Positions 5,728 through 45,000 of a stretch of DNA of 64,000 nucleotides are shown one piece after another; within the stretch, counting starts at the first letter, position 1, and each line of letters opens with the position of its first letter. Location: assembly GCA_002269645.1 (NCBI GenBank), contig NIVC01001119.1, positions 186,001-250,000 on the forward strand, in the 5' to 3' direction. The notes below the pieces were generated by a model, which was not told where the DNA came from, searched no databases, and saw only the letters and a list, made by a program, of their open reading frames with translations. Both the position numbers and the translations under genes were made by a program. The DNA is from Macrostomum lignano (lineage: Eukaryota).

Positions 5728-8539
5728 TTAGTTGGTGAAACCGCGCGAAGCCCGGCGACCGCGGGCCTTCTCAAATTTGCGACCCTTCGATCGGACCACC
5801 GGCTTGGTGTGCGAGTGCGGCACCCCCGGCGGCCGGCCGAAATGCCGCTGGGCGGCCCGCTTTCTCGTGCCCTGCACCAGCAGCGTGTTCTGGCCTTTGG
5901 GGGCCCGCCTGGCCAGCTCGTCGAAGGTGATGATCTCTCCGCCGGCTGCCAGGAGGCGGGCGCGAGCCTTCTCAGTAACCCGCAGGGCGCACAGGGTCAC
6001 CTGCGGTAAGAGATTAATAGGTCAAGAAAGATTTTAATTGACTATTCAAATCTCAACTATAGTAATAAGAGCTACTAACGCCAATACTTAAGTCGAAGCT
6101 TTGGCGCCACAGTAGCCTAGCTAAGATTTTGGCGCCACAGTAGTCTAGCTAAGATTTTGGCGCCACAGTAGTCTAGCTAAGATTTTGGCGCCACAGTAGC
6201 CTAGCTAAGATTTTGGCGCCACAGTAGTCTAGCTAAGATTTTGGCGCCACAGTAGCCTAGCTAAGATTTTGGCGCCACAGTAGCCTAGCTAAGATTTTGG
6301 CGCCACAGTCGCCTAAGTTTTGGCACCTCAGTAGCTTGTCTTTGGCGCCACAGAAACTCGAGCTTTGGCGCCACAGTAGCCTAATTTTGGCGCCACAGTA
6401 TGCTGATTTTTCGTACCACAGTAGCTTTATTTTTTTGGCGCCCAAAACAATCTTACTTTTCTCCGCCATAGTACCGGGTGTCCGGATTGAACGGAAACGC
6501 TGCTGATTTTTTGAATATTTTTTGCAATTTCTCAGCAAGACAAGCAGCTGTACCATTTATTTTTGACAACAGTAAACAGGAAGGTGTCAGCATTGTTCTC
6601 ATTCAAAATGGCCGCCATTGGCCGCGATCACGCGCTCCAGCCTCTTCCTGAACTGCTGGCACACCTTCCTCACATAGTTGGTGTCCATTCTCTCCCACGC
6701 CAGCCGAACAGCAGCCTGCAGCGCTTCCACACTGCTGTGGCAGGATCTGCAGGCCTCGCTCTCCACACGCTGCCAGATTGAGAAGTCCAGCGGATTCAGG
6801 TCCGGACTGGAGGGCGGCCACATCGTCTTCGGCCAGAAGTTCGCCATGTTGTCTGCCAAGAACTGCTGGGTTGTGGCCGCTGTGTGAGCCGGAGCACCGT
6901 CCTGCTGCCACACGTACTGTCCGTCAGGGTACTGCTGATGCAGCCAAGGCAGCACGTGCTGCTGCAGCAGCTGCTGGTAGCATGCAGCATTCACTTTGGT
7001 GCCTGGGTTGATGAAAATGGGGGGACACCTCCGTCCATCACTCGCAACGACGCCCAGCATCATGATGGAGGCCGGGTGCTTAGACTTCATACTGTACTTC
7101 ACGTGGGCAGGTGTGTCCGCGCTGCTGGCGGCGCTGATGTAGCGAGTGTTGCGCCTGTTCACGGCTTGGTCACAGGTGAACAGTTTCTCGTCGCTGAACA
7201 CGCGCACCAGCGAGCCGTGGTTCTTCACCCACGTGAGCAACTGCCTGCACCGCTTGAGACGCGATACCTTCTGCTTCGAAGTGATGAGGTTCTTCGGCAC
7301 CACCACCCTGGACACCATGCCGAGGTCTTCTTTGACGAGCTCCGACATTGTCGTCTTGCTCATGTCGTGCTCACGTGCCAGTCGGCGAATCGACCTTCGG
7401 GGATTTCGGTTGACCTTCGCCCGGACGGCTGCGACGGTCTTCTTCGTCCTTTTTGTCCTCGGACGACCACCCCCATGTCTTTTGGTGACATCTCCTGTGT
7501 CGTTCAGCAGCTTCCTCACAGTGAAAATCCTCTTTCTGCTCACATTGAGCACTTCTCTGATGTCGCTAGTTGACTTTCCAGCGCAAAGTAATTCAGCGAT
7601 TGCTCGTCTTTGAGCCTCGTGCTCAGCCATGGTTAGGAATAAAGCTGCAAGAGTGGATGTATTAAATTCTGTGATTTCTGCTGGTTCTGACACCAATGCA
7701 AAATTTTGAATTTTGCGAAAGATTACGTAATTAACGACGTTTTAAGCAGCGTTTCCGTTCAATCCGGACACCCGGTACTCGTAGCTTAAGTTTTGGCGTC
7801 TAAGTAGTCTAATTTTGGCGCCACAGTATCTTACGCTACAGTAGCCCAAGTTTTGGAGCCTCAGTGCCTATTTTTGGCGCCACAGTAACTAAGCTTTGGC
7901 GCCATAGTAGCTTGAGTTTTGGCACCACAGTCAGAAGCTTCATTTTGGCACTACAGTAACTAAGCTTTGGCGCCACAGTAACTAAGCTTTGGCACCACAG
8001 TAACTAAGCTTTGGCGCCACAGTAACTAAGCTTTGGCGCCACAGTAACTAAGCTTTGGCGCCACAGTAGCTTGAGTTTTGGCACCACAGTCAGAAGCTTC
8101 ATTTTTGGCGCCAACGTAGCCCAAGTTTAGGCGCCACAGTAGTCCAAGTCTTGGCGCTAGAGTAGCTTAAGTATTTGGCGCCACAGTAGGCTAAAGTAAA
8201 CCTGAATAAAGAACAATAACCATCCAAATTAGTCAGACAACAACAAACCTTGGGCACAGTCTGCACCCGAGAGTCGTTAGTAACGGTTCCCACGGTGACA
8301 ACAATGCGGCCCTCGCGATTCGGTTTGCGCAGCATTCGGCCCAGACGAGCCAGAGACAGCGGGCCCCGATTGGCCCGGCTCATGAACAGGCGGCGAAGGA
8401 TGATCTTGTTGAATTTGGCGCCAGTGCGGCGGGCTAGGAATCGGTAGAGTTTCACCAGCAGGCGCAGATAGACATCGTCGGATTTCGGATTGGTGCGACG
8501 CACCTTGCGATCGTTCTTGTGGCAGATGTCAACGCCCAT
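5728..8539 (-). CDS. RPL18: 60S ribosomal protein L18 (eL18), 2 coding exons, 187 aa
   Basis: Exon 8539-8249 ([16 protein letters not shown]...VQTVPK) and exon 6000-5728 ([17 protein letters not shown]...[29 protein letters not shown]); AAG|GT and CAG|G sites, phase 0. Confidence 0.97.
6095..6470. repeat. TTTTGGCGCCACAGTAG-core minisatellite (about 28 bp), left part
   Basis: Same unit continues at 7780-8195 on the other side of the transposon. Confidence 0.9.
6474..7775 (-). mobile_element. Intact Tc1/mariner-superfamily DNA transposon, DD37D (maT) family, 1302 bp
   Basis: 31-bp perfect TIRs (CCGGGTGTCCGGATTGAACGGAAACGCTGCT), TA target duplication at 6472-6473 and 7776-7777, uninterrupted transposase ORF. 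Confidence 0.96.
6599..7630 (-). CDS. DD37D transposase, 343 aa from the ATG at 7630
   Basis: N-terminal HTH region; [13 protein letters not shown] and [12 protein letters not shown] motifs; 37 residues counted between the second and third Asp. Confidence 0.95.
   Translation of the reverse strand: MAEHEAQRRAIAELLCAGKSTSDIREVLNVSRKRIFTVRKLLNDTGDVTKRHGGGRPRTKRTKKTVAAVRAKVNRNPRRSIRRLAREHDMSKTTMSELVKEDLGMVSRVVVPKNLITSKQKVSRLKRCRQLLTWVKNHGSLVRVFSDEKLFTCDQAVNRRNTRYISAASSADTPAHVKYSMKSKHPASIMMLGVVASDGRRCPPIFINPGTKVNAACYQQLLQQHVLPWLHQQYPDGQYVWQQDGAPAHTAATTQQFLADNMANFWPKTMWPPSSPDLNPLDFSIWQRVESEACRSCHSSVEALQAAVRLAWERMDTNYVRKVCQQFRKRLERVIAANGGHFE
7780..8195. repeat. TTTTGGCGCCACAGTA-core minisatellite, right part
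   Basis: Continuation of the array split by the maT insertion. Confidence 0.9.
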
Positions 8540-28909: not shown

Positions 28910-29191
28910 ATGTCGGCCCAGTCGCCAGCCTCAATGTCGCTAATGGAACAGGAGCTGAATCGGGCTCAGATTCGAGAGATTTTCACCTCGTTTAATCGAT
29001 CGCATCAGCGCTGCTTCACCGATTGCGTTAACAAATTCGACAGGCGAAGCGTTAGCGATTCGGAGAAGAATTGCGTAGCAAACTGCGTGGCCAAGTATAT
29101 GAATACTACTCAGAGAATTTCTATGCGATTCCAGGAGCACCAGGCCATGATCACGGGCGGCGGGGCTGTTGCTCAAGGCCAGGGAAAATAG
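28910..29191 (+). CDS. TIMM9: Mitochondrial intermembrane-space small Tim chaperone Tim9
   Basis: Twin CX3C motif (CFTDC...CVANC) followed by KYMNTTQRISMRFQEHQ, typical of Tim9. Confidence 0.85.
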   Translation: MSAQSPASMSLMEQELNRAQIREIFTSFNRSHQRCFTDCVNKFDRRSVSDSEKNCVANCVAKYMNTTQRISMRFQEHQAMITGGGAVAQGQGK

Positions 29192-30064: not shown

Positions 30065-30402
30065 GGACTAGCAAAGGCACACTTGAGCACAAGCACAACA
30101 AAAATTTCCATCAGAACGTCTTTTGCCTGATTGCTCGCCTCCATGGCTAGAAAAAAATAGTTTGATTAACTTGCGAAAGACACTTTGGTATTTTGCTCCA
30201 TATAAAATTCGGAACCTCAGAAGGTGAAGTTTTGTCTGTATTTTGTGGCGATAACCAGCCTCCAGTGAAATTTGAGTGCAGAGTCCTGCTTTGATTATCC
30301 ATGGTCAAAAGTCAGTTGCGTATCTGAGATGAAATTTCATCGACAGCTCCAAAAGTGGAAAAAAAGTCCAACTTTTAAATATTTGTAATATAAATTCTTC
30401 AG

Positions 30403-31578
30403 GAAAGCCAACCGTCTGCTGTAACAGTGGCAGCAACAGCGCCACAGTGCGTCGCAGCTGAAGCTTCACATTCATCTGAGAGCCAAGTTGAAGTTAACAA
30501 ACTAGTTGAACTAACAGATTGCAATCTTAACTTAGAAGCAAGCCAGGGTCGAAGTCAGCAAGCTAATAAACAACGATTTAAACAAGCGCGAGCGCCTCCG
30601 CCTGCAAAACAACAAGCTGAGGCATGCCAGTCATTGAATTTCCGTAATCCAGTAACCGCACGTTATCCAAACACGGATCAGTTGTGGCACAGAGTTGGAG
30701 AATTATCCCTATTCGATTGGTCAGTGTCCGGCAACGAGACTTGCATAGTAGTTCGCGGTCGAGGCTTCTGCATCGCTCTAGACGTTGGCGCCTGCCCGCC
30801 GCAGGCTGTGGACGCCGATCACGTGTTTATTAGTCACGGTCACGTTGATCATTGCGGCGCATTGCACATGCATATTAGAAAGCGTCAGTTGCTTAGACTG
30901 CCACCGGCTGTCTACTACATGCCCGAATGTCTAATAAATTCAATGCAATCTACATTGGCTGCATTTGTTACCATGCAAGGTGACAGCGACTATGCGGAAA
31001 TGGTGTCCAACTCTAGACTTGTCGGTTTGAAAGTTGGCGATCGAGTTCCAATTAGTAATGACAATAATCAGCCTGCCGATGCAGCCAGTCTGACCTTGAG
31101 CGTATTCGCTACTGATCATCGGGTGCCCAGTTTGGGCTGCATATTGCGCCGTAGACACATCGTTTTGCTGCCTGAATGTCGTCGACTGAGCCAGGATGAG
31201 CTGCGAGCACGGGTTGCTCAGGGCCTGCCAGTGCGCGGTCCCGAGTGGGAGCCGTTGCTAGGCTACACTGGAGACACCAGATTCAATGTATTCTTAACGC
31301 CGCAAGATCCGGACTTGTTGCGCGTTAGATTGCTCATTTCCGAGTTGACATTTTTGAGTGGTTCGATTGAACGCGCAGATAGTTTTGGACATTGTCACGT
31401 TGATCAATTTGCGCAGCATTGGAGACTGTTTGGCGCTGTGAATCGGCTTGTGTTTGTGCACTTTAGCAATAAGGTTTTGCCGGAAGAGATTCTTGAGCGG
31501 GTGTACTCAACTTTGCCTCAACAGCTGGGTCGCAGAGTCTACTGCGGACTGATTGCCAAGAGATTGCTGTATTCATGA
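30403..31578 (+). CDS. TM-type short-form tRNase Z (metallo-beta-lactamase fold), paralogue 1; 5' end at an in-frame acceptor
   Basis: WSVSGNET (EGxSxxG-like), SHGHVDH, TDHRVPSLG, GYTGDT, SELT, GHCH and VHFS motifs. The first genomic in-frame ATG lies downstream of HxHxDH. Confidence 0.8.
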   Translation, partial: ESQPSAVTVAATAPQCVAAEASHSSESQVEVNKLVELTDCNLNLEASQGRSQQANKQRFKQARAPPPAKQQAEACQSLNFRNPVTARYPNTDQLWHRVGELSLFDWSVSGNETCIVVRGRGFCIALDVGACPPQAVDADHVFISHGHVDHCGALHMHIRKRQLLRLPPAVYYMPECLINSMQSTLAAFVTMQGDSDYAEMVSNSRLVGLKVGDRVPISNDNNQPADAASLTLSVFATDHRVPSLGCILRRRHIVLLPECRRLSQDELRARVAQGLPVRGPEWEPLLGYTGDTRFNVFLTPQDPDLLRVRLLISELTFLSGSIERADSFGHCHVDQFAQHWRLFGAVNRLVFVHFSNKVLPEEILERVYSTLPQQLGRRVYCGLIAKRLLYS

Positions 31579-31878
31579 GCCATGGACTACAAAATGAAAG
31601 AGAAACTTTCCAAACAGAGCTTGTTATCCTTAAGTAATTTGCTTGTACACAAGCTTGGTAACTATATGTGCAATAGACAGACTGATATGTACCGAAACAA
31701 ATCTGATATAGCTGAATATGAGCAACCATTCTCAACCATCCGATTTATCGTGGCTTTGAGGCAAGCATAGAAATCGAACACCAAAATGGTGTACACTTCT
31801 TCTCTGAGATAAAAAGACTGTAAAGGATTGCTCATCTGCAAAATGACTGCGGTTAAAGGGTCCTCAAAAATTGAGAAC

Positions 31879-31992
31879 ATGCTTGGGCGCAACCTAGGGA
31901 TTCACCCGGCCGTTTCTATTATCAACACACACATGTAAGTCGCTATTGGACAGAATAGTAGTCACGTGATTCCCAAGGTTGCGCATGTATGA
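31879..31992 (+). mobile_element. Intermediate-length copy of the hairpin-type interspersed element
   Basis: Same termini as 10987-11060; internal sequence matches part of 22259-22432. Confidence 0.75.
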
Positions 31993-32920
31993 ATTTGAGA
32001 AACTACTCGTATATTGGTTGCTGAAGTTTTTAAAATACTTCTACCCGTGAATATTATTGGTTGATGCAGGGAAATCCGTTGCTCACGAATTTAATCTCTC
32101 ATTCAACTGAGAGAAGTAAACTCGGTCGTTTGAGACACAGACAAGTAACTTTATAGCCTCGCAGATAATCTTCACGACCAAAGGCAACTTTTGGGAGGAC
32201 TCCAGGCTTTGCCATGCTTCAAGGCTTTAAGATTAAGTATTAAAAAAACACGAAACAAACAATGAAACTTAGTCTATGTTAGAAAGCTCCCTTGACTAAT
32301 ACTTTACATATGGTGGGAATGATTAATACTATTTATTAACTTAAAATATAAAAGGAAATGTCCCAAATTTTGAGGATTTTCGACCACAGAGACATTTCGT
32401 GGACCGAGCAGTCCATCACGTTTCGTTATCTATGCCAGACTAATTTTGCTCAGTCTGATTTGGATTTAATTAAGTGCTGTATGGACTGCTTGGGGTTGGT
32501 TGCCTTTTAACTGAAAAAATTTATGGTTGTATATGAGTGTGTTCTTAGACGAATAAAACGAAGACGAATAATAAAACAATGCCATGCATTTCAGCGTATT
32601 GGCTCTTGTATTTCTTTTGTTTTTGTTTACGTATTTTAGTTCTTACTAGGTATTTTACTTGTAGTAAAAATCTTTTGTGTATAGTACTGACTCAGTAGCT
32701 AGTGTGGTTCGCTTAATATAAAAACTCCCTTAGAATAACAAAATAGCTTCTACCTAGGAATTCCGTGTGACAGTGACAGTAGCTCAAAAAGATATTCTTA
32801 GAGATATTTTTGAATCCTGAATTTTGCACAGCAATTTTGACGCTTAGAAAAACCAGTAGCTCAAAAAGATACTCACGCTACATATCGGCTGGTTTGCCAT
32901 GATTTTTGTCCCTATTCCAG

Positions 32921-33793
32921 TGTCTGTCAGTGCCCGATCCCCTCCTGCCCCTGCCGGCATGGATGGCTGGCCTGTTTGCCCTGCTAATCGCTGTTGGCTT
33001 TGTGCTCAGCCTGTACCTGTGGGAGCTCGGCTCGGCCAATGCTCGAGCTGGGGTTGATCGCGACAATCCTAAAGTGATTATTCGCAGGTTTCTCGGCGTC
33101 TCAGCGGTTAGTTTAAGCGTGCTAATCTGCTATAGGTACTTTCTGATGAAGCCGACAGCTGCCAGCTGGTCAGATGTGCTCCAGCTGATCGGTCTGAGAT
33201 GGTCCGGAATGCTGCCAGCTGTTGGAGCATCCTTGTTGCTAACCGCTATTCTGTTCACTGGCCCGATTCTGCTAGCCTGGGAGACTGGCGACGGATTCTT
33301 TGATAGGGAACCGCTGCTGAGTTTGAGATGCTGCCGCACTTTAGTGTTGGCTCCGGTCACTGAGGAGCTGTGCTTTCGCGCCCTGATGCTGCCGGTGCTG
33401 TGCGTTCATCTCTCTTGCACTCGGGCGGCCTTCCTGTCGCCGCTGTTCTTCGGCTTGGCGCATTTTCATCATTTGATTAACCGGCTACAGCGCGGCTATC
33501 CGCTTGTGCCCAGCCTGATTCAGGCAACGTTTCAATTCTCCTACACTTACATATTCGGCGTGTATTCGGCCTACTTGTATTTGAGAACTGGCCAGTTAGC
33601 TGCCGCCTGCGCCGCGCATTCCTTCTGCAATCTGATGGGTTTCCCTGATTTTGAGGCGCTGGCCAATCTGCGAGGAATTAAGCTGGCGGTGCACGGCGGC
33701 GCCTTTGTTTTGGGCTTGGTTGGTTGGCTGGCCCTGCTGGGGCGGCTGACCGAACCAGCGATGTTTGCTTCGCAGTGCGACTGCTTCTGGTAG
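32921..33793 (+). CDS. RCE1: CAAX prenyl protease 2 (CPBP family)
   Basis: EELCFR, FGLAHFHH and HSFCNLMGFP catalytic motifs plus multiple TM helices. Start is either the in-frame acceptor at 32920 or the ATG at 32963. Confidence 0.92.
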   Translation, partial: CLSVPDPLLPLPAWMAGLFALLIAVGFVLSLYLWELGSANARAGVDRDNPKVIIRRFLGVSAVSLSVLICYRYFLMKPTAASWSDVLQLIGLRWSGMLPAVGASLLLTAILFTGPILLAWETGDGFFDREPLLSLRCCRTLVLAPVTEELCFRALMLPVLCVHLSCTRAAFLSPLFFGLAHFHHLINRLQRGYPLVPSLIQATFQFSYTYIFGVYSAYLYLRTGQLAAACAAHSFCNLMGFPDFEALANLRGIKLAVHGGAFVLGLVGWLALLGRLTEPAMFASQCDCFW

Positions 33794-33859
33794 CGAGTTG
33801 TTTGATCCATCTATTAACTGTTGTTGCGAGTTTACTTGCTTTTTATATACATCTAACCC

Positions 33860-34420
33860 TTCGAAAATCCCTGCAATAAACCCCTCACACAGATCCCTAC
33901 ATCAAACCCTTCACAAATCCCTACATTAAGCCCTTCACACAGATCCCTGCACCAAACCCTTCACAAAGACACCTACATTAAACCATTCACAGATCCCTAC
34001 ATTAAACCCTTCACACAGATCCCTGCACCAAACCCTTTACAAAGACACCTACATTAAACCATTCACAAATCCCTACATTAAACCCCTCACACTGATCCCT
34101 ACACCTAACCCTTCACATGAATCCTACATCTAACCTTCACACAGTTCCCTACATCTAACCCTTCATATGGATCATACGTCTAATCCTTCACACAGATCCC
34201 TATATCTATCTAACCCTTCACACAGTTCTCTTCATCAACCCTTCACACGGTTCCCTACATCTAACCCTTCACTTGGATCTTACATCTAACCCTCCACACA
34301 GATCCCTGCATCTAACCCTTCACACGTCCCTAAATCTAATTCTTTACACAGATTCCTACATTAAACCCTTCACACATTCCTACATTATTCTTACCCTTCA
34401 CAAGAGGTCCCTGCACAAAA
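33860..34420. repeat. Degenerate 25-26-bp minisatellite (CCCTTCACACAGATCCCTACATCTAA)
   Basis: Shares the CAGATCCCTAC core with 27470-28165. Confidence 0.85.
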
Positions 34421-35021
34421 CCAGTCAGCCAGTTTAAGCCTAAAATCCCCAACTTCAATAAAATATTTGTGAATCTTTATTTTTGCGTCCTAAAAATGGT
34501 GTGGCTTTACTTGTTAGTAACTTTTCAAATATAAATTTGTTAGTTGTTTCTGCAAGAACATTTGCACTCTTCTATCAGCTAAGGTTTATGTTTACTCTTG
34601 TAAGTTTTGTTACATTGTTTATACATGTACGTTAAGCATTGAGAGTTTTCTACTCAACGAATCAGTCAATCAATCGATATTTATTCAAATTTGCTGAAAA
34701 AGTTAAACTGAATTTAATCTGTTGGCAGTCATTTTTCCTGATTTTTAATTCATACTTTTGTAAGTTTTTATTTTCAATTTCTCATTTATGCGACTTTGGT
34801 TATTATTCTTAACAGTGAGGCAAAGAGATTACTTTTTTCAATAAATGTATTACGGACGGAATTACTGGCTACTTTCCTACTTGACAAGCTGGTTTATCTT
34901 GCTACTTAATTATATTTAGTTTTACCAGACTTATTCTTATTTTCCTGATTGCTCCAGGTGCTTAAACCATTGTTGTAGGAATGTAAAGGTAGTTATTTGT
35001 TTATTAGATTTTAAGGCCGTT

Positions 35022-38000
35022 GCAGTAATCAGGGATTGTGTCGGGGTTGCAGTGTTGCAGTAATCAGGGATTGTGTCGGGGTTGCAGTGTTGCAGTAATC
35101 AGGGATTGTGTCGGGGTTGCAGTGTTGCAATAATCAGGGATTGTGTCGGGGTTGCAGTGTTGCAGTAATCAGGGATTGTGTCGGGGTTGCAGTGTTGCAG
35201 TAATCAGGGATTGTGTCGGGGTTGCAGTGTTGCAGTAATCAGGGATTGTGTCGGGGTTGCAGTGTTGCAGTAATCAGGGATTGTGTCGGGGTTGCAGTGT
35301 TGCAGTAATCAGGGATTGTAGCAGGGTTGCAGTGTTGCAGTAATCAGGGATTGTGTCGGGGTTGCAGTGTTGCAATAATCAGGGATTGTGTCGGGGTTGC
35401 AGTGTTGCAGTAATCAGGGATTGTGTCGGGGTTGCAGTGTTGCAATAATCAGGGATTGTAGCGGGGTTGCAGTGTTGCAGTAATCAGGGACTGTAGCAGG
35501 GTTGCAGTGTTGCAATAATCAGGGACTGTAGCAGGGTTGCAGTGTTGCAATAATCAGGGATTGTGTCGGGGTTGCAGTGTTGCAGTAATCAGGGATTGTG
35601 TCGGGGTTGCAGTGTTGCAATAATCAGGGATTGTGTCGGGGTTGCAGTGTTGCAGTAATCAGGGATTGTAGCAGGGTTGCAGTGTTGCAGTAATCAGGGA
35701 TTGTAGCAGGGTTGCAGTGTTGCAGTAATCAGGGATTGTGTCGGGGTTGCAGTGTTGCAGTAATCAGGGATTGTGTCGGGGTTGCAGTGTTGCAATAATC
35801 AGGGATTGTGTCGGGGTTGCAGTGTTGCAATAATCAGGGATTGTGTCGGGGTTGCAGTGTTGCAGTAATCAGGGATTGTGTCGGGGTTGCAGTGTTGCAA
35901 TAATCAGGGATTGTGTCGGGGTTGCAGTGTTGCAGTAATCAGGGACTGTAGCAGGGTTGCAGTGTTGCAATAATCAGGGACTGTAGCAGGGTTGCAGTGT
36001 TGCAATAATCAGGGATTGTGTCGGGGTTGCAGTGTTGCAGTAATCAGGGATTGTGTCGGGGTTGCAGTGTTGCAGTAATCAGGGATTGTGTCGGGGTTGC
36101 AGTGTTGCAATAATCAGGGATTGTGTCGGGGTTGCAGTGTTGCAATAATCAGGGATTGTGTCGGGGTTGCAGTGTTGCAGTAATCAGGGATTGTGTCGGG
36201 GTTGCAGTGTTGCAATAATCAGGGATTGTAGCGGGGTTGCAGTGTTGCAGTAATCAGGGACTGTAGCAGGGTTGCAGTGTTGCAATAATCAGGGACTGTA
36301 GCAGGGTTGCAGTGTTGCAATAATCAGGGATTGTGTCGGGGTTGCAGTGTTGCAGTAATCAGGGATTGTGTCGGGGTTGCAGTGTTGCAGTAATCAGGGA
36401 TTGTGTCGGGGTTGCAGTGTTGCAGTAATCAGGGATTGTAGCAGGGTTGCAGTGTTGCAGTAATCAGGGATTGTGTCGGGGTTGCAGTGTTGCAGTAATC
36501 AGGGATTGTGTCGGGGTTGCAGTGTTGCAATAATCAGGGATTGTGTCGGGGTTGCAGTGTTGCAGTAATCAGGGATTGTGTCGGGGTTGCAGTGTTGCAA
36601 TAATCAGGGATTGTAGCGGGGTTGCAGTGTTGCAGTAATCAGGGACTGTAGCAGGGTTGCAGTGTTGCAATAATCAGGGACTGTAGCAGGGTTGCAGTGT
36701 TGCAATAATCAGGGATTGTGTCGGGGTTGCAGTGTTGCAGTAATCAGGGATTGTGTCGGGGTTGCAGTGTTGCAATAATCAGGGATTGTGTCGGGGTTGC
36801 AGTGTTGCAGTAATCAGGGATTGTAGCAGGGTTGCAGTGTTGCAGTAATCAGGGATTGTAGCAGGGTTGCAGTGTTGCAGTAATCAGGGATTGTGTCGGG
36901 GTTGCAGTGTTGCAGTAATCAGGGATTGTGTCGGGGTTGCAGTGTTGCAATAATCAGGGATTGTGTCGGGGTTGCAGTGTTGCAATAATCAGGGATTGTG
37001 TCGGGGTTGCAGTGTTGCAGTAATCAGGGATTGTGTCGGGGTTGCAGTGTTGCAATAATCAGGGATTGTGTCGGGGTTGCAGTGTTGCAGTAATCAGGGA
37101 CTGTAGCAGGGTTGCAGTGTTGCAATAATCAGGGACTGTAGCAGGGTTGCAGTGTTGCAATAATCAGGGATTGTGTCGGGGTTGCAGTGTTGCAGTAATC
37201 AGGGATTGTGTCGGGTTGCAGTGTTGCAGTAATCAGGGATTGTGTCGGGGTTGCAGTGTTGCAATAATCAGGGATTGTGTCGGGGTTGCAGTGTTGCAAT
37301 AATCAGGGATTGTGTCGGGGTTGCAGTGTTGCAGTAATCAGGGATTGTGTCGGGGTTGCAGTGTTGCAATAATCAGGGATTGTAGCGGGGTTGCAGTGTT
37401 GCAGTAATCAGGGACTGTAGCAGGGTTGCAGTGTTGCAATAATCAGGGACTGTAGCAGGGTTGCAGTGTTGCAATAATCAGGGATTGTGTCGGGGTTGCA
37501 GTGTTGCAGTAATCAGGGATTGTGTCGGGGTTGCAGTGTTGCAGTAATCAGGGATTGTGTCGGGGTTGCAGTGTTGCAGTAATCAGGGATTGTAGCAGGG
37601 TTGCAGTGTTGCAGTAATCAGGGATTGTAGCAGGGTTGCAGTGTTGCAGTAATCAGGGATTGTGTCGGGGTTGCAGTGTTGCAATAATCAGGGATTGTGT
37701 CGGGGTTGCAGTGTTGCAGTAATCAGGGATTGTGTCGGGGTTGCAGTGTTGCAGTAATCAGGGATTGTGTCGGGGTTGCAGTGTTGCAGTAATCAGGGAT
37801 TGTGTCGGGGTTGCAGTGTTGCAGTAATCAGGGACTGTAGCAGGGTTGCAGTGTTGCAATAATCAGGGACTGTAGCAGGGTTGCAGTGTTGCAGTAATCA
37901 GGGACTGTAGCAGGGTTGCAGTGTTGCAATAATCAGGGATTGTGTCGGGGTTGCAGTGTTGCAGTAATCAGGGATTGTGTCGGGGTTGCAGTGTTGCAGT

Positions 38001-39825
38001 AATCAGGGATTGTGTCGGGGTTGCAGTGTTGCAATAATCAGGGATTGTGTCGGGGTTGCAGTGTTGCAATAATCAGGGATTGTGTCGGGGTTGCAGTGTT
38101 GCAGTAATCAGGGATTGTGTCGGGGTTGCAGTGTTGCAATAATCAGGGATTGTAGCGGGGTTGCAGTGTTGCAGTAATCAGGGACTGTAGCAGGGTTGCA
38201 GTGTTGCAATAATCAGGGACTGTAGCAGGGTTGCAGTGTTGCAATAATCAGGGATTGTGTCGGGGTTGCAGTGTTGCAGTAATCAGGGATTGTGTCGGGG
38301 TTGCAGTGTTGCAATAATCAGGGATTGTAGCGGGGTTGCAGTGTTGCAGTAATCAGGGACTGTAGCAGGGTTGCAGTGTTGCAATAATCATGGACTGTAG
38401 CAGGGTTGCAGTGTTGCAATAATCAGGGATTGTGTCGGGGTTGCAGTGTTGCAGTAATCAGGGATTGTGTCGGGGTTGCAGTGTTGCAGTAATCAGGGAT
38501 TGTGTCGGGGTTGCAGTGTTGCAATAATCAGGGATTGTGTCGGGGTTGCAGTGTTGCAATAATCAGGGATTGTGTCGGGGTTGCAGTGTTGCAGTAATCA
38601 GGGATTGTGTCGGGGTTGCAGTGTTGCAATAATCAGGGATTGTGTCGGGGTTGCAGTGTTGCAGTAATCAGGGATTGTGTCGGGGTTGCAGTGTTGCAGT
38701 AATCAGGGATTGTGTCGGGGTTGCAGTGTTGCAGTAATCAGGGATTGTGTCGGGGTTGCAGTGTTGCAGTAATCAGGGATTGTGTCGGGGTTGCAGTGTT
38801 GCAGTAATCAGGGATTGTGTCGGGGTTGCAGTGTTGCAGTAATCAGGGATTGTGTCGGGGTTGCAGTGTTGCAGTAATCAGGGATTGTGTCGGGGTTGCA
38901 GTGTTGCAGTAATCAGGGATTGTGTCGGGGTTGCAGTGTTGCAGTAATCAGGGATTGTGTCGGGGTTGCAGTGTTGCAGTAATCAGGGATTGTGTCGGGG
39001 TTGCAGTGTTGCAGTAATCAGGGATTGTGTCGGGGTTGCAGTGTTGCAGTAATCAGGGATTGTGTCGGGGTTGCAGTGTTGCAGTAATCAGGGATTGTAG
39101 CGGGGTTGCAGTGTTGCAGTAATCAGGGATTGTAGCGGGGTTGCAGTGTTGCAGTAATCAGGGATTGTAGCGGGGTTGCAGTGTTGCAGTAATCAGGGAT
39201 TGTAGCGGGGTTGCAGTGTTGCAGTAATCAGGGATTGTAGCGGGGTTGCAGTGTTGCAGTAATCAGGGATTGTAGCGGGGTTGCAGTGTTGCAGTAATCA
39301 GGGATTGTAGCGGGGTTGCAGTGTTGCAGTAATCAGGGATTGTAGCGGGGTTGCAGTGTTGCAGTAATCAGGGATTGTAGCGGGGTTGCAGTGTTGCAGT
39401 AATTAGGGATTGTAGCGGGGTTGCAGTGTTGCAGTAATCAGGGATTGTAGCGGGGTTGCAGTGTTGCAGTAATCAGGGATTGTAGCGGGGTTGCAGTGTT
39501 GCAGTAATCAGGGATTGTAGCGGGGTTGCAGTGTTGCAGTAATCAGGGATTGTAGCGGGGTTGCAGTGTTGCAGTAATCAGGGATTGTAGCGGGGTTGCA
39601 GTGTTGCAATAATCAGGGATTGTGTCGGGGTTGCAGTGTTGCAGTAATCAGGGATTGTGTCGGGGTTGCAGTGTTGCAGTAATCAGGGATTGTAGCGGGG
39701 TTGCAGTGTTGCAGTAATCAGGGATTGTAGCGGGGTTGCAGTGTTGCAATAATCAGGGATTGTGTCGGGGTTGCGGTGTTGCAATAATCAGGGATTGTAG
39801 CGGGGTTGCAGTGTTGCAGTAATCA
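35022..39825. repeat. 4.8-kb 35-bp satellite, about 137 copies, with higher-order variant structure
   Basis: Unit GCAGTAATCAGGGATTGTGTCGGGGTTGCAGTGTT. Confidence 0.99.
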
Positions 39826-40016
39826 AGGCAATTAATACACGTGCCGTTAATGGTACGCTCGTATTTAGCTCATTGCATCACAATGTGAGAATCAAAAAGC
39901 CTTTTAAAAATAAATTTCGTTGGAATTTATGTACCGTTGCGTAAGAATAAAAGTAGAAAGATACAGAAAACTGGTTTTGGCTGCCCTGAGCAGTTAGTTC
40001 AAGCCGGGGTGACACA

Positions 40017-41045
40017 ATGTCCCATAGTGACGAGGGTGCGGAGACCGCCAAAGCGGCCAGTTGGGTCGAGTTTTTTGCCGACCAACCGCAGAACAAGCTG
40101 CGAGTGTTCGACTGGTCAGTGTCCGGCTTTGAGACTTGCATAGTAGTCCACGGTCCCAGCTTTCGTCTGGCGCTGGACATTGGCGCCTGTCCGCCGCAGG
40201 CAATCAGCGCCGATCACGTGTTCATTAGTCACGGTCACGTGGACCATTGCGGAGCACTGCACCAGCACATGCGCCGGCGTCAACTGGTAGGCCTACCACC
40301 AGCTACGTACTACGTGCCGGGGCATCTGGTCCAGCCGCTGATTGACATTGCTCGGCTATTCAGCGTCGTACATGGCGACGAAGACGAGGACAACGAAGGA
40401 GGTTCTGCGAAACTGTCGACGAAAGATAAAAAATCCAAGAAAGAGGATGCCACTGTCGCAGACGGTGCCTCAGCCGAAGCTGGGAGTGACGAAATAAAAA
40501 TCTACGGCAAAATTGTAGCCGCTACTCCGGGTGACGATCTGCAACTGTCAAAGAATCTTCGCATTCGTCCGTTCGCCACAGATCATCGAGTACCCAGCAT
40601 TGGCTGTCTGGTGTACTGCAAGCGCAGCCAGTTGCTACCCAAATATGCCGGCCTGCCGGGTGCGGAACTTGCCGAACTGGCTCGCAACGGGGAACAGTTA
40701 CGAGAGGCTCGGTGGGAACCCGCTATCGGCTATACAGGGGATACCAGATTCACTGTTCTAGCGTGTCCTCCCGAACCCGACCTGCTCAAGGTTAGACTGC
40801 TAGTCTGCGAGCTAACCTACGTTGAAGGGCCGACAGATACAGCTGAGAAATACGGTCATTGTCATTTGCACGATTTCTCGTCGCGTGCAAATCTGTTTGA
40901 CAATGTTGGCCAGCTGTTGTTTGTGCACTTTAGTAGGCGGCACTCGCCTGACCAAGTGATTAACGCTGTGCTGACTTCGCTGCCAGAGGAGCTACGGTCT
41001 AAGGTCTACTGCGGACTCAATGCTCTGCGGTTCTACCGTTCCTGA
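40017..41045 (+). CDS. TM-type short-form tRNase Z, paralogue 2, intronless, 342 aa
   Basis: WSVSGFET, SHGHVDH, TDHRVPSIG, GYTGDT, CELT, GHCH and VHFSRRH motifs; AATAAA at about 41080. Confidence 0.85.
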   Translation: MSHSDEGAETAKAASWVEFFADQPQNKLRVFDWSVSGFETCIVVHGPSFRLALDIGACPPQAISADHVFISHGHVDHCGALHQHMRRRQLVGLPPATYYVPGHLVQPLIDIARLFSVVHGDEDEDNEGGSAKLSTKDKKSKKEDATVADGASAEAGSDEIKIYGKIVAATPGDDLQLSKNLRIRPFATDHRVPSIGCLVYCKRSQLLPKYAGLPGAELAELARNGEQLREARWEPAIGYTGDTRFTVLACPPEPDLLKVRLLVCELTYVEGPTDTAEKYGHCHLHDFSSRANLFDNVGQLLFVHFSRRHSPDQVINAVLTSLPEELRSKVYCGLNALRFYRS

Positions 41046-42014: not shown

Positions 42015-45000
42015 CCTGTCCTGCAGACCTGCATGATCCACCTTACTACTCCATTTGCATTCCATCCCAGCTGCAATTCGCTGTCAACATGACCTGTCAA
42101 TCATGCGCCGACTCGGTCAGTCGAGTTCTATCCAGTCACCAGCCGGCAAGCGACTTCGCGGACATCCGAATTCAACTGACTGAACAGCAGGTCATCCTGC
42201 GCACTTCGCTGCACGTTGACTCAGTGCTGGAGCTGCTGGAGACCACCGGCTGTCGGGCTGTGCTGCAAGGCGTTGGCACAGCCAGCCAGGGCATGCGGGG
42301 TCAGGACTTCGCATCTGGCGTCGTACAATTGGAATCAGTTTATACTACTAATACTAGTAGTGTCCAGGGAGTAGTTCGAATTTTGCAGCCAGACGATCAG
42401 CAGTGCCTGTTCGATGGCACAGTGGACGGTCTGGAGCGCGACAGTTGGTACAGCCTCGAGGTCCGTCAGGGCGGTGATCTGTCTGGGGGGTCTGACACAT
42501 GTGGTCCGGTGTATAATGACGGCTCTGATGATGCACAGGTGCGTTCTGTGTTATATATCCCTGTTTTTGTCTGTCTGCATCTTGGGGTGTACGCTCTCTC
42601 ACCTTACAGCATTCGCTCTCTCACCTTACAGCATCCGCTCTCTCACCTTACAGCATCCGCTCTCTCACCTTACAGCATTCGCTCTCTCACCTTACAGCAT
42701 CCGCTCTCTCACCTTACAGCATCCGCTCTGTCACCTTACAGCATCCGCTCTCTCACCTTACAGCATCCGCTCTCTCACCTTACAGCATCCGCTCTCTCAC
42801 CTTACAGCATTCGCTCTCTCACCTTACAGCATCCGCTCTCTCACCTTACAGCATCCGCTCTGTCACCTTACAGCATCCGCTCTCTCACCTTACAGCATCC
42901 GCTCTCTCACCTTACAGCATCCGCTCTCTCACCTTACAGCATCCGCTCTCTCACCTTACAGCATCCGCTCTCTCACCTTACAGCATCCGCTCTCTCACCT
43001 TACAGCATCCGCTCTCGCACCTTACAGCATCAGCTTCCTCATCAGTTACAGCATCCGCTCCCTCATCAGTTACAGCATCAGCTTCCTCATCAGTTACAGC
43101 ATCCGCTCCCTCATCAGTTACAGCATCTGCTTCCTCATCAGTTACAGCATCCGCTCCCTCATCAGTTACAGCATCTGCTTCCTCATCAGTTACAGCATCC
43201 GCCCAGTATCTGTCAGCATCTGTCTCATGTTGCAAACTGAAAAAATATCTGATAGAGTTATTTCTGTAGACAAGGTTTAGCTATAAATGTTTTCAGCCTG
43301 CCGAAAAGACATTTATATACATAGAAACATACAAAAAATCAACTAACAACAGCGTCTCCATGGCAACTCAAATGCCTACGGCCTGACCAGCGTGCTAGCG
43401 GACGAGTTGACCTGCCCGCGGCCTCATCTAGTCCCAGTCGCCTCAGGTTTCCTATCCAACGATTTGCGACCGCTAAGCGGCTTGCAAAAGTTTCTGGCCG
43501 CTAATTTTCCCGCCCCAGACTTGCGGCATCTGAAGCGGGCCGCCCCGGCCGCCTCCGCGCCTGACTGCAGTCGCCGATTTCGCGTTCTCCTTTGCCACGC
43601 CGCCGACTTACCTAATTTGGAATGTTCTGAAGAATTTTCAACGATTTGGAGACCTAAATTAGATAGCGTAGAAATTGTTATGGCGCCGGGTAGTGCGCCG
43701 CGTACCAGGCGACAATGGGAGCTCACTTCCGGTTATTGGCCCTGCTCGTTTCATGCTGACAAGTCTATCGAATCGGAGCTGTCGTTGGATTGCTTTACTA
43801 AAGCTGAAGGTGTCGCTTGTCTGAGGCATATGCTGCGCTCGCTGGCTCTCGGTCGAACTTCCGGTTCTGCGTCTGCCGATACTTCCGGTCTGAAACCCGC
43901 ATCCACTTCCGGTTCCACGTCTGCTGATACTTTCGGCCTGAAACCCGCTTTCATTTCCGGAGCCGCGTCTACCGATACTTCCGGTCTGAAACCCGGTTCC
44001 ACGTCTGCTGATACTTCCGGTCTGAAACCCGGTTCCACGTCTGCTGATACTTCCGGTCTGAAACCCGGTTCCACGTCTGCTGATACTTCCAGTCTGAAAC
44101 CCGGTTCCACGTCTGCTGATACTTCCGGTCTGAAACCCGGTTCCACGTCTGCTGATACTTCCAGTCTGAAACCCGGTTCCACGTCTGCTGATACTTCCGG
44201 TCTGAAACCCGGTTCCACGTCTGCTGATACTTCCAGTCTGAAACCCGGTTCCACGTCTGCTGATACTTCCGGTCTGAAACCCGGTTCCACGTCTACCGCT
44301 ACTTCCGGTCTGAAACCTCCTTCCGCTTCCGGTTCCGCGCCTGCTGATACTTCCTGTCTGAAACCCGCTTCCACTTCCGGTCCTGCATCCGCTTCATCTT
44401 CTTCTGCATTCGCCGCTCTGCGCCTCCCAGTCCCCCAATCGGCCTGTCTAATCGTGGACCCTCGCACCGACACAGTGCTGGTGGAATGCCAAGACGAGCG
44501 CCGCCTCTGCCCGACCTGGCACGCCACCCTCCGGGCCGTCCAACAGCTGGGCGGCCGAGGCGACTACCTGTGCACCGGCCTGGACGCTTACGTCACCGAC
44601 GAGCCGTGCCACATGTGCGCTATGGCGCTGCTGCACTCCCGGGTGGCTCGGGTTTTCTACTGCCGACCGAGGCCGCGCGGCGCCCTCGGCAGCATCGCCA
44701 AACTGCACTGCCATCCGCGATTGAATCATCGGTTCCGCGTGTACCGACTTTTCCCTCTGAGTGCGGCTCGAACTGGGGAGAGTTGACGGTTGGATTGCGA
44801 TTCTTGCTTGCTCTTTAACCTGGCCCTTTGTCGGCCACCGTTGTCCTTCAGTTGGTGTAGCTACCCTTCAGTTGGTGTAGCAACCCTTCAGTTGGTGTAG
44901 CAACCCTTCAGTTGGTGTACCTACCCTTCAGTTGGTGTACCTACCCTTCCGTTGGTGTAGCAACCCTTCAGTTGGTGTACCTACCCTTCAGTTGGTGTAC

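What the first reader, a model, noticed from the sequence alone, without database searches (positions are those of the whole stretch)
30403..41045. Two intronless TM-type short tRNase Z paralogues in an animal genome, with divergent features
Seen: both proteins carry TM-type hallmarks, namely an EGxSxxG-like WSVSGxET in place of the PxKxRN loop, xExT and HxH in place of HEAT/HST, and a short arm. Established: TM-type short tRNase Z is characteristic of plants and Thermotoga, while animals typically use ELAC2 and bacterial-type ELAC1. The copies differ. Z-1 has an N-terminal extension of about 90 aa and motif V HFSNK, lacking the usual Arg. Z-2 keeps HFSRRH and has an acidic/Lys insertion of about 40 aa (DEDEDNEGG...KDKKSKKED, NLS-like). 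Inference: either an ancient patchily retained lineage or a horizontal acquisition, followed by tandem duplication and sub- or neofunctionalisation (different compartments, tRNA repair, or another phosphodiester substrate).
Basis: partly seen in the sequence, partly recalled or inferred. Interest (0 to 1): 0.7.

Follow-up and report, generated by a model that had tools for sequence, protein, structure and literature searches.

The report
Plant-type short tRNase Z pair in flatworm
The flatworm Macrostomum lignano carries two intact copies of a tRNA-end-processing enzyme of the "plant/Thermotoga" type; this type turns out to be an old, unstudied gene family present in many invertebrate phyla, not a foreign acquisition.

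Summary
Window 30403-31578 (Z-1) and 40017-41045 (Z-2) are two uninterrupted + strand ORFs, 43% identical, in Macrostomum lignano. Both encode TM-type short tRNase Z proteins. Their best solved relative is rice RNase ZS1/TMS5, by sequence (E=1e-43; profile 260 bits, against 46 for human ELAC1) and by predicted fold (TM 0.85-0.89). Both keep every metal and catalytic motif, carry xExT and HxH in place of HEAT and HST, have a 30-residue arm without a GP motif, and lack PxKxRN.

These are not an oddity of one genome. Orthologues occur in molluscs, annelids, brachiopods, nemerteans, tardigrades, hemichordates and parasitic flatworms, and relatives occur in a choanoflagellate and in stramenopiles. 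Some are already auto-named "tRNase Z TRZ1-like". I found no paper that treats them, and the 2012 metazoan survey missed them.

Z-1 and Z-2 are a Macrostomum-lineage duplication (bootstrap 91-92%). They are sister to the flatworm parasites' copies, which have lost the tRNA-binding arm. Ancient patchy retention is favoured over horizontal transfer.

Z-1's Lys in motif V is normal for animal members. Z-1 has no ATG of its own, and an in-frame trans-splice acceptor suggests that the spliced leader supplies the AUG.

The likely function is a Zn-dependent phosphodiesterase acting on tRNA 3' ends: trailer removal and/or 2',3'-cyclic-phosphate repair.

The parts
30397..30402 (+). CTTCAG, a match to the M. 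lignano SL trans-splice acceptor motif [T/C]TNCAG. It lies 4 nt after the in-frame stop TAA (30391-30393) and directly before the Z-1 reading frame.
   Evidence: Sequence. The motif scan finds it as the only in-frame instance in 30150-30720. Motif and SL sequence (ending in ATG) are from PMC8629364. The upstream 120 nt are identical in the second copy L005.
30403..31578 (+). Z-1 coding region (391 codons plus stop). TM-type short tRNase Z paralogue without an ATG of its own. NCBI gene models PAA88017.1 and PAA71140.1 are marked 'partial'.
   Evidence: Weak Pfam/NCBIfam RNase Z hits. AF2 core pLDDT >95. Foldseek top hit 7xgt, TM 0.85-0.89.
30403..30690 (+). Z-1 N-terminal extension of about 96 aa. 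The first 30 aa are acidic (0 K+R, 4 D+E). AF2 confidence is low. It does not look like a mitochondrial presequence.
30835..30852 (+). Z-1 motif II, HGHVDH (metal ligands).
   Evidence: invariant D149, H150.
31156..31245 (+). Z-1 flexible arm, HIVLLPECRRLSQDELRARVAQGLPVRGPE. 30 aa, no GP motif, degenerate KL motif.
   Evidence: Confidently folded in the AF2 model.
32921..33793 (+). Rce1-like CAAX prenyl protease gene lying between the two paralogues. Not part of the enzyme pair, but it shows the copies are not strictly tandem. An in-frame TTCCAG acceptor-like site ends at 32920, and the first in-frame ATG is at 32963.
   Evidence: Pfam PF02517, E=2e-18.. 100% identical protein at the homeologous locus.
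35019..39825 (.). 35-bp satellite array, 137 copies, making up most of the spacer between the Rce1-like gene and Z-2.
   Evidence: The array is shorter in L005. It explains the GC-skew block.
40017..41045 (+). Z-2 coding region (342 aa, own ATG). TM-type short tRNase Z paralogue, 99% identical to PAA88019.1.
   Evidence: AF2 pLDDT 89.4. Foldseek top hit 7xgt, TM 0.87-0.88. dN/dS 0.155 against the second copy.
40230..40247 (+). Z-2 motif II, HGHVDH.
   Evidence: invariant D76, H77.
40371..40496 (+). Z-2-specific acidic/Lys insertion, HGDEDEDNEGGSAKLSTKDKKSKKEDATVADGASAEAGSDEI. A disordered surface loop with one KKSK (minimal NLS-like) match.
   Evidence: Retained in two independent gene models (P0001, P0002) and in L005.
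40623..40712 (+). Z-2 flexible arm, RSQLLPKYAGLPGAELAELARNGEQLREAR. 30 aa, no GP motif, partial KL motif.

Best explanation
Z-1 and Z-2 are two functional paralogues of the TM-type (plant TRZ1 / rice RNase ZS1-TMS5-like) short tRNase Z.

Origin (inferred from trees and profile scores). The gene was inherited vertically in animals as an old eukaryotic gene. It survives in many invertebrate phyla and has not been seen in vertebrates, arthropods or nematodes. It was duplicated within the Macrostomum lineage after the split from the parasitic flatworms.

Mechanism (inferred from homology; not assayed). Each protein is a single metallo-beta-lactamase domain. The HxHxDH, motif III His, motif IV Asp and motif V His residues bind two Zn ions, and the Glu of xExT with the His of HxH act as the proton-transfer pair. 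By analogy with solved tRNase Z structures, the enzyme should work as a homodimer: the ~30-residue arm of one subunit holds the tRNA elbow while the tRNA 3' end enters the other subunit's active site. The substrate is most likely the tRNA 3' end. The enzyme would either cut off 3' trailers without CCA anti-determination (there is no PxKxRN loop) or, like TMS5 and ELAC1, remove the 2',3'-cyclic phosphate from deltaCCA-tRNAs made by Vms1/ANKZF1 during ribosome quality control, so that the CCA-adding enzyme can rebuild the end.

Start codon (inferred). Z-1 most likely gets its AUG from the trans-spliced leader.

Paralogue-specific parts (speculative). Z-2's disordered acidic/Lys loop and Z-1's N-terminal extension may be regulatory or localisation add-ons.
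For: - Identity of the organism and genes.
- Sequence. Z-2 matches rice RNase ZS1 (7xgt) at E=1e-43, T. maritima at 0.027, and ELAC1 is not listed. The metazoan profile scores 260 bits to 7xgt, 74 to T. maritima, 46 to ELAC1 and 27 to B. subtilis.
- Fold. For both paralogues the AF2 models match 7xgt best (TM 0.85-0.89), then T. maritima (0.74-0.78). ELAC1 ranks 22nd at 0.62.
- Catalytic integrity. All eight family-invariant residues are present. Both paralogues keep 30 of 32 positions conserved at 80% or more.
- Selection. Z-2 has dN/dS 0.155 between the two genomic copies.
- Duplication. Z-1 + Z-2 are sisters at 92% and 91% bootstrap. Their sister is Neodermata in 64.5% and 78% of replicates, and Platyhelminthes is recovered at 53% and 75%.
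- Animal affinity. Named orthologues occur in molluscs, annelid, brachiopod, nemertean, tardigrade, hemichordates, cestodes, trematodes and a monogenean. Z-1/Z-2 score 249/285 bits against a non-flatworm animal profile, 226/258 against protists, 172/222 against bacteria and 133/163 against plants.
- Genomic setting. The Spirometra orthologue has introns and sits on a 42.9-Mb chromosome. The second M. lignano scaffold has the same order, Tim10 - Z-1 - Rce1 - Z-2 - CCS.
- Function of the closest characterised relative. TMS5 is a tRNA 2',3'-cyclic phosphatase, as is ELAC1 (PMC11897441, PMC11831146).
- SL-donated AUG. The SL ends in ATG and the acceptor motif is [T/C]TNCAG (PMC8629364). The SL AUG can act as an initiator in flatworms (Cheng 2006, as cited in PMC12582326). 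CTTCAG|GAA is in frame.
Against: - No biochemical, expression or localisation data exist for any animal member, and no paper was found.
- Monophyly of all animal members is only weakly recovered by NJ (35-50%). The oomycete Lagenidium nests among them.
- In 14% of replicates of the large data set, and about 9% of the reduced one, the nearest neighbour of Z-1/Z-2 is non-animal.
- The choanoflagellate sequence does not group specifically with animals.
- Between the two genomic copies Z-1 shows 3 non-synonymous and 0 synonymous differences. That is too few to show constraint.
- NCBI's partial Z-1 models start at Pro (30412), not at 30403, so the exact 5' end of the transcript is unknown.
- The KL motif of the arm is degenerate in both paralogues (LLP in place of KLK).
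- The closest flatworm relatives have lost the arm altogether, which hints that the flatworm lineage may have moved away from tRNA substrates.
- I could not check whether M. lignano also has ELAC1, which could already do the repair job.
Confidence: 0.72

Rival explanations
1. Horizontal acquisition: the flatworm genes came from a bacterium or an alga and were then duplicated in Macrostomum.
For: - Z-2's first word-indexed search put a bacterial protein (P0005, 146 bits) right after Spirometra.
- Several local motifs resemble bacterial members: FATDHRV..GC, HGH.DHCGA, and LLP..AG in the arm.
- The genes are intronless in M. lignano.
- Metazoan monophyly has only 35-50% NJ support.
Against: - The exhaustive profile search ranks animal proteins (217-270 bits) above the best bacterial one (195 bits).
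- A profile built without flatworms fits Z-1/Z-2 best when it is made from animals.
- Orthologues are found across Platyhelminthes, and the Spirometra one has introns.
- In 83% of bootstrap replicates the sister of Z-1/Z-2 is made only of animal sequences (Neodermata, other Metazoa, or both).
- The neighbouring Tim10 and Rce1 genes are also single ORFs, so the lack of introns is not special to these genes.
Confidence: 0.07
2. Neofunctionalisation away from tRNA: the flatworm lineage, including one or both Macrostomum paralogues, now acts on another phosphodiester substrate. Candidates are an mRNA or other RNA, as first proposed for rice RNase ZS1 on UbL40 mRNA, or small cyclic nucleotides as for Apyc1-like MBL enzymes.
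For: - All Neodermata orthologues have deleted the arm needed for tRNA binding, while their catalytic motifs are largely intact (Echinococcus reads HSR at the HxH site).
- The KL motif is degenerate in Z-1 and Z-2, and both share loss of two conserved Tyr.
- There are faint Apyc1 Pfam and PDB similarities.
- Plant RNase ZS1 and ZS2 have also been reported to act on mRNAs (titles and abstracts).
Against: - Z-1 and Z-2 keep a full-length arm that folds confidently and has ordinary net charge (+1, against a family median of +2).
- Apyc1 is a much poorer structural match (TM 0.61-0.65) than the tRNase Z structures.
- No direct evidence exists for any alternative substrate.
Confidence: 0.15
3. Z-1 is a decaying or non-translated duplicate, a 5'-truncated copy without a start codon, and only Z-2 is functional.
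For: - There is no in-frame ATG before the catalytic domain, and the first Met codon lies after motif II.
- All NCBI models of Z-1 are 'partial'.
- Z-1 shows 3 non-synonymous and 0 synonymous differences between copies.
- Z-1 has a slightly longer branch and lower profile scores than Z-2.
Against: - The ORF is open for 391 codons.
- All invariant catalytic residues and 30 of 32 conserved positions are kept at 43% identity to Z-2, which implies long purifying selection since the duplication.
- An in-frame SL acceptor motif sits exactly at the start of the open frame and is conserved in the second copy.
- SL-donated AUGs are documented in flatworms.
- With only three differences, 0 synonymous is expected 44% of the time under neutrality (own arithmetic).
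Confidence: 0.06

Closest known systems
Rice RNase ZS1 / TMS5 and Arabidopsis TRZ1/TRZ2 (plant TM-type tRNase ZS; PDB 7xgt)
   Same: - Best sequence and fold match.
- Same length class.
- Same motif set: Ser/Gly-containing loop in place of PxKxRN, xExT, HxH, 30-aa arm without GP, and motifs I-V.
- TMS5 is a tRNA 2',3'-cyclic phosphatase, which gives the most likely activity.
   Different: - Only 27-28% identity.
- The loop is WSVSG rather than EGISIGG.
- The arm reads LLPxY/LLPEC rather than KLKxEY.
- The Tyr after motif III Gly and the Tyr of S-x-R-Y are replaced.
- In the trees the animal clade groups with protist sequences, not with plants.
- Z-1 and Z-2 carry an N-terminal extension and an acidic/Lys loop that rice ZS1 lacks.
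Thermotoga maritima tRNase Z (PDB 1ww1, 2e7y), the founder of the 'TM type'
   Same: Short arm without a GP motif, no PxKxRN, and second-best structural match (TM 0.74-0.78).
   Different: - Much more distant in sequence (74 bits to the profile; E=0.027 to Z-2 alone).
- T. maritima keeps the His of HEAT (HECT) and has NHAA rather than HxH.
- It falls outside the whole plant/animal/bacterial assemblage, next to the outgroups (bootstrap 96% for Eco+Bsu+Tma).
Human ELAC1 and bacterial RNase Z / RNase BN (bacterial-type tRNase ZS; PDB 3zwf, 1y44, 2cbn)
   Same: Same superfamily, same metal-binding motifs I-V and same overall reaction. ELAC1 shares the cP-deltaCCA-tRNA repair role with TMS5.
   Different: - PxKxRN, HEAT, HST and the GP-containing ~55-aa arm are all absent from Z-1 and Z-2.
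- NCBIfam RNase_Z scores are 36-44 bits against a cut-off of 293.
- The structural match is poor (TM about 0.6).
Uncharacterised invertebrate orthologues auto-named 'tRNase Z TRZ1-like' or 'nuclear ribonuclease Z-like' (for example Mizuhopecten, Lingula, Saccoglossus, Octopus)
   Same: Same orthogroup, 33-37% identical to Z-2, with the same WS[VI][SA]G loop, xExT, HxH, arm and HFS[DN][KR]Y motif V.
   Different: - They appear as a single gene in the named species.
- Mollusc members have basic, presequence-like N-termini.
- The Macrostomum pair shares derived GC and KV/RH substitutions and has paralogue-specific insertions.
Arm-less orthologues of parasitic flatworms (Echinococcus, Taenia, Spirometra, Opisthorchis, Clonorchis, Cichlidogyrus)
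   Same: Closest relatives of Z-1 and Z-2 in the trees, sharing the TDH form of motif III.
   Different: They lack the whole ~25-aa flexible-arm segment, whereas the Macrostomum proteins keep it.

Membership tests
TM-type short tRNase Z (as defined by Fan et al. 2011, PMC3161902) | Single metallo-beta-lactamase domain of short-form length with motifs I-V (D, HxHxDH, H, D, H). | tested here: met
   Both paralogues keep all invariant residues. The AF2 core is confident.
TM-type short tRNase Z (as defined by Fan et al. 2011, PMC3161902) | Short (~30 aa) flexible arm without the GP motif. | tested here: met
   The arm is 30 aa in both, with no GxPxGP. The E. coli control has one.
TM-type short tRNase Z (as defined by Fan et al. 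2011, PMC3161902) | KL motif KLKxxYxxLxGxxIxxLK in the arm. | tested here: inconclusive
   Z-2 has QLLPKYAGLPGAELAELA, which keeps Y, L, G and L. Z-1 has VLLPECRRLSQDELRARV, which keeps only the Leu positions. The Lys residues are largely replaced.
TM-type short tRNase Z (as defined by Fan et al. 2011, PMC3161902) | No PxKxRN loop; a Gly-rich EGxSxxG motif in its place. | tested here: inconclusive
   PxKxRN is absent. In its place is FDWSVSG: only the Ser and the last Gly of EGxSxxG are kept. All animal members share WS[VI][SA]G.
TM-type short tRNase Z (as defined by Fan et al. 2011, PMC3161902) | xExT in place of HEAT, and HxH in place of HST. | tested here: met
   SELT/CELT and HCH/HCH.
TM-type short tRNase Z (as defined by Fan et al. 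2011, PMC3161902) | Closer in sequence and structure to plant and T. maritima enzymes than to bacterial-type ZS or ELAC1. | tested here: met
TM-type short tRNase Z (as defined by Fan et al. 2011, PMC3161902) | tRNA 3'-end endonuclease or cyclic-phosphatase activity, insensitive to CCA. | not testable with these tools
   Needs enzyme assays.
Bacterial-type tRNase ZS / animal ELAC1 | [quoted passage not shown] | tested here: not met
   None of these are present. NCBIfam TIGR02651 scores 36-44 bits against a cut-off of 293. The ELAC1 fold match has TM about 0.6.
Anti-Pycsar Apyc1-like cyclic-nucleotide phosphodiesterases | Compact arm-less MBL domain matching PF23023 or the Apyc1 structures. | tested here: not met
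   Z-1 and Z-2 give no PF23023 hit. Apyc1 matches at E=0.11 in sequence and TM 0.61-0.65. Z-1 and Z-2 possess the arm.

The most novel reading that the evidence does not exclude
Flatworms have repurposed the TM-type tRNase Z. The arm was deleted in the parasitic Neodermata, which implies a non-tRNA or partner-dependent substrate. In Macrostomum the gene was split into two specialised enzymes: Z-2 with a disordered acidic/Lys, NLS-like loop, and Z-1 with an SL-initiated N-terminal extension. On this reading the family marks a previously unrecognised RNA-repair or RNA-processing activity in invertebrates that vertebrate hosts lack.
Probability: 0.2. Interest if true: 0.65.

Novelty: new member of a known kind. 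Interest (0 to 1): 0.45.

Why it matters
- It corrects the textbook picture that animals have only ELAC2 and bacterial-type ELAC1. A third tRNase Z lineage, the plant TRZ1/TMS5 type, exists in many invertebrate phyla, and the published metazoan survey overlooked it.
- TMS5 is now known to repair cyclic-phosphate tRNA ends after ribosome quality control. The animal orthologues are therefore testable candidates for that step in species where ELAC1 is absent or redundant; Capitella, for example, was reported to have no short form.
- M. lignano is a tractable model with RNAi and transgenesis, and it has two diverged copies to compare.
- The arm-less versions in tapeworms and flukes, with no vertebrate counterpart seen here, are a natural experiment on what the arm is for. 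They are also a parasite-specific enzyme worth characterising.

Tried and rejected
- Pfam and NCBIfam scans gave only sub-threshold Lactamase_B and RNase_Z hits, so they could not classify the proteins.
- I looked for a cryptic intron in the Z-2 insertion. A 60-nt GT...CAG interval (40402-40461) exists, but its donor GTTCTG is poor. The segment is retained in two independent gene models and in the second genomic copy, so I treated it as coding.
- I looked for an upstream ATG exon for Z-1. The short ATG ORFs at 30141, 30302 and 30329 all end in stops, and the one plausible donor would be out of frame (own reading).
- The SL sequence itself is not in the window.
- The idea that the Macrostomum arms have lost their basic charge was rejected: net +1 against a family median of +2.
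- The idea that Z-1's extension is a mitochondrial presequence was rejected on composition.
- dN/dS for Z-1 between genomic copies was uninformative, with only three differences.
- Literature searches for animal TRZ1-like proteins and for the Mlig gene ids found nothing. The key TMS5 paper (PMC11528004) is not held.
- I did not search for ELAC1 or ELAC2 in M. lignano, because no tool here lets me query that genome.

Full report
**What is there**

The window comes from the free-living flatworm Macrostomum lignano. Z-2 (40017-41045, +, 342 aa) is 99% identical to PAA88019.1. Z-1 corresponds to PAA88017.1 and PAA71140.1, both annotated as 'partial'. The two ORFs are 43% identical over 316 residues, E=3e-93, and the window has no third copy.

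The gene order is Tim10 (28910-29191), Z-1, an Rce1-like CAAX protease ORF (32921-33793), a 35-bp satellite of 137 copies (35019-39825), Z-2, a (TGTC)n tract, and a CCS-like HMA-domain gene (from 42071). All are on the + strand. A second M. lignano scaffold (L005, NIVC01001184.1) has the same order with a shorter satellite. The pair is therefore a stable part of an ordinary animal chromosome region. That region also holds RPL18, an ASC channel and class C GPCR exons.

**Checking the motif claims**

Curated HMM libraries give only sub-threshold hits: Lactamase_B_2 at 26 bits, and RNase_Z at 36-44 bits against a cut-off of 293. Solved structures settle the question.

| Comparison | Rice RNase ZS1/TMS5 (7xgt) | T. 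maritima tRNase Z | Human ELAC1 | B. subtilis RNase Z |
|---|---|---|---|---|
| Z-2 alone, sequence | E=1e-43 | E=0.027 | not listed | not listed |
| 17-sequence animal-clade profile (16 animal-clade sequences + Lagenidium), bits | 260 | 74 | 46 | 27 |
| AF2 models of Z-1 and Z-2, TM-score normalised to the target | 0.85-0.89 | 0.74-0.78 | 0.62 (rank 22) | 0.66-0.69 (best chain, 1y44_A) |

The AlphaFold2 models are confident in the core: Z-2 mean pLDDT 89.4 and Z-1 84.3, with the core above 95.

The motif table shows, for both paralogues:
- motif I D and motif II HGHVDH;
- motif III (TDH), motif IV (GDT) and motif V (HFS);
- SELT/CELT where bacterial-type enzymes have HEAT;
- HCH where they have HST;
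- no PxKxRN and no GxPxGP (with E. coli RNase BN as positive control);
- a 30-residue arm.

The definitions used are those of Fan et al. 2011 (PMC3161902). Two of their features are met only loosely. The EGxSxxG loop reads FDWSVSG, and the KL motif is degenerate (LLP in place of KLK).

**How widespread the family is**

Fan 2011 even suggested the type might be plant-specific, and the 81-species metazoan survey reported no TM-type enzyme (PMC3433465). The sequence databases tell a different story.

An exhaustive profile search found 2436 cluster representatives at E<1e-3, 1221 at E<1e-10 and 301 at E<1e-30. The best-scoring ones that carry names are animals:
- Hemichordates: Saccoglossus, Glandiceps.
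- Molluscs: Octopus, Lymnaea, Haliotis, Mizuhopecten, Ylistrum, Mercenaria, Ruditapes, Mactra, Dreissena, Sinanodonta.
- Lingula (brachiopod), Tubulanus (nemertean), Capitella (annelid), Paramacrobiotus (tardigrade).
- Cestodes: Spirometra, Schistocephalus, Dibothriocephalus, Echinococcus, Taenia, Hydatigera.
- Trematodes: Opisthorchis, Clonorchis.
- Cichlidogyrus (monogenean).

Further out are Salpingoeca rosetta, Nannochloropsis, an ochromonad and Lagenidium, as well as bacteria: the P0005 contig has a typical bacterial gene neighbourhood, and there are Acidobacteria and Planctomycetota MAGs.

Some animal entries already carry pipeline names such as 'tRNase Z TRZ1-like' or 'ribonuclease Z chloroplastic'. 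Full-text searches found no paper that discusses them. The 2012 survey lists no short form for Capitella, although ELT99514.1 is one. No vertebrate, arthropod, nematode, cnidarian or sponge sequence appeared among the named top hits. That is absence from what I could see, not proof of absence.

**Origin**

NJ trees used Kimura-corrected distances and were rooted on E. coli RNase BN and B. subtilis RNase Z. Two data sets were analysed: 196 taxa with 200 bootstraps, and 77 taxa with an L-INS-i alignment and 500 bootstraps.

| Grouping | 196 taxa | 77 taxa |
|---|---|---|
| Z-1 + Z-2 sisters | 92% | 91% |
| Neodermata | 72.5% | 81% |
| Platyhelminthes | 53% | 75% |
| Sister of the Macrostomum pair is Neodermata alone | 64.5% | 78% |
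| Sister is made only of animal sequences | 83% | 86% |
| All animals monophyletic | 50% | 35% |

Monophyly of all animal members is weak, partly because the oomycete Lagenidium nests among them.

An independent test built HMMs from groups that exclude flatworms. Z-1/Z-2 scored 249/285 bits against non-flatworm animals, 226/258 against protists, 172/222 and 181/192 against two bacterial groups, and 133/163 against plants.

The Spirometra orthologue has about five exons spread over 5.4 kb of a 42.9-Mb chromosome. Lack of introns is also not special to these genes in M. lignano, because Tim10 and Rce1 next door are single ORFs too.

I conclude that the gene is vertically inherited at least within Platyhelminthes and probably in Metazoa. 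It has been lost many times, and it was duplicated in the Macrostomum lineage. Horizontal transfer is unlikely (about 7%).

**Are both copies functional?**

Both keep all eight residues that are invariant in a 49-sequence family alignment.

Between the two genomic copies, Z-2 has 12 synonymous and 6 non-synonymous changes (dN/dS 0.155). Z-1 has only three changes, all non-synonymous, which is uninformative.

Z-1 has no ATG. The frame opens after TAA at 30391, and the first internal Met lies beyond motif II. Three facts suggest where its start codon comes from:
- 30397-30402 reads CTTCAG, which matches the M. lignano trans-splice acceptor motif [T/C]TNCAG.
- The 35-nt spliced leader ends in ATG (PMC8629364).
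- Joining the leader to 30403 puts that ATG in frame.

Use of the SL 3' AUG as initiator is documented in flatworms (Cheng 2006, as cited in PMC12582326). This would also explain why every annotation of Z-1 is 'partial'. It remains an inference, and the NCBI models start three codons further in.

**Paralogue-specific parts**

Z-2's 42-residue DEDEDNEGG...KDKKSKKED segment (40371-40496) is absent from all relatives. It is predicted disordered, with pLDDT about 50, and contains one KKSK match. A nuclear signal is possible but unproven.

Z-1's extension of about 96 residues is low-confidence and acidic at its start. This contrasts with the basic, acid-poor N-termini of the mollusc orthologues, which look like organelle presequences.

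The arms of both paralogues are full length, confidently folded and of ordinary charge.

**Likely mechanism**

By homology, each protein is a two-zinc phosphodiesterase, probably dimeric. It would use the arm to hold a tRNA and would act on the tRNA 3' end.

The closest characterised enzyme, rice TMS5, removes the 2',3'-cyclic phosphate from deltaCCA-tRNAs produced by Vms1 in ribosome quality control. Human ELAC1 does the same (PMC11897441, PMC11831146). T. maritima and plant TM-type enzymes process 3' trailers and are thought to lack CCA anti-determination. I consider tRNA 3'-end trimming and/or cyclic-phosphate repair the most likely function, at roughly 70%.

The main rival, at about 15%, is a shift to another substrate in flatworms. 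It is prompted by complete loss of the arm in every neodermatan orthologue. In Spirometra that deletion lies inside a single exon, so it is not an annotation artefact.

**Verdict**

It is a new member of a known kind. Three points of moderate interest stand out:
- the overlooked third tRNase Z lineage in animals;
- the Macrostomum duplication, with an apparently SL-initiated paralogue;
- the arm-less enzymes of parasitic flatworms.

Noticed in passing
L003 9190-9324 (Spirometra); proteins P0004, P0028, P0058, P0187-P0191, P0040: Every orthologue from parasitic flatworms (cestodes, trematodes, a monogenean; 270-278 aa for the full-length ones) lacks the ~25-30-aa flexible arm between motifs III and IV, while the catalytic motifs are largely kept (Echinococcus reads HSR at the HxH site). 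In Spirometra the deletion lies within one exon. Only 9 of 196 family members analysed lack the arm. One of them, P0040 from a JGI metagenome, is of unknown origin.
   Followed up: partly
window 32915-32923 and 42065-42073: Like Z-1, the Rce1-like gene (TTCCAG|TGT, junction 32920/32921) and the CCS-like HMA gene (TCCCAG|CTG, junction 42070/42071) have acceptor-like sites in frame with their ORFs. The CCS ORF has no ATG before [12 protein letters not shown], so it may also use the spliced leader's AUG. UniProt models fuse Z-2 to CCS through this same acceptor (P0002, P0184).
   Followed up: partly
window 35019-39825: A 35-bp satellite (137 copies, 96% matches) with strong GC skew fills most of the gap between the Rce1-like gene and Z-2. 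It is much shorter at the homeologous locus L005. The window holds many other satellites (24.9-25.7 kb, 27.4-28.2 kb, 41.4-42.0 kb, 46-47.3 kb, 48.3-50 kb, 50.7-51.6 kb).
   Followed up: partly
proteins P0027, P0176, P0024, P0032, P0181, P0177, P0178, P0183, P0211: Mollusc orthologues carry 46-112-aa N-terminal extensions that are basic and nearly free of acidic residues in the first 30 aa. These look like mitochondrial presequences, whereas hemichordate, nemertean, tardigrade and neodermatan proteins start 10-20 aa before the first motif.
   Followed up: no
protein P0031 (Lagenidium giganteum): The homologue from this oomycete, a pathogen of mosquito larvae, nests beside the non-flatworm animal clade in the reduced NJ tree. 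It scores higher against the animal profile (309 bits) than against the protist profile (260). This could be a short-branch effect or a transfer from an animal.
   Followed up: no
window 30403-31575 vs L005 9992-11164; window 40017-41042 vs L005 16373-17398: Divergence between the two genomic copies is uneven. Z-1 differs at 3 of 1173 nt (all non-synonymous, and the 120 nt upstream are identical), while Z-2 differs at 18 of 1026 nt and Rce1 at 7 of 885 nt (all synonymous). Recent gene conversion over Z-1 is one possible reason.
   Followed up: no
window 43392-44786 (+), 6599-7696 (-): A 464-aa ORF with a cytidine/deoxycytidylate deaminase zinc-binding domain lies just downstream of the CCS gene region (PF00383, E=2.5e-10, with a MafB19-like deaminase hit). 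A DDE_3 transposase ORF lies at 6.6-7.7 kb.
   Followed up: no
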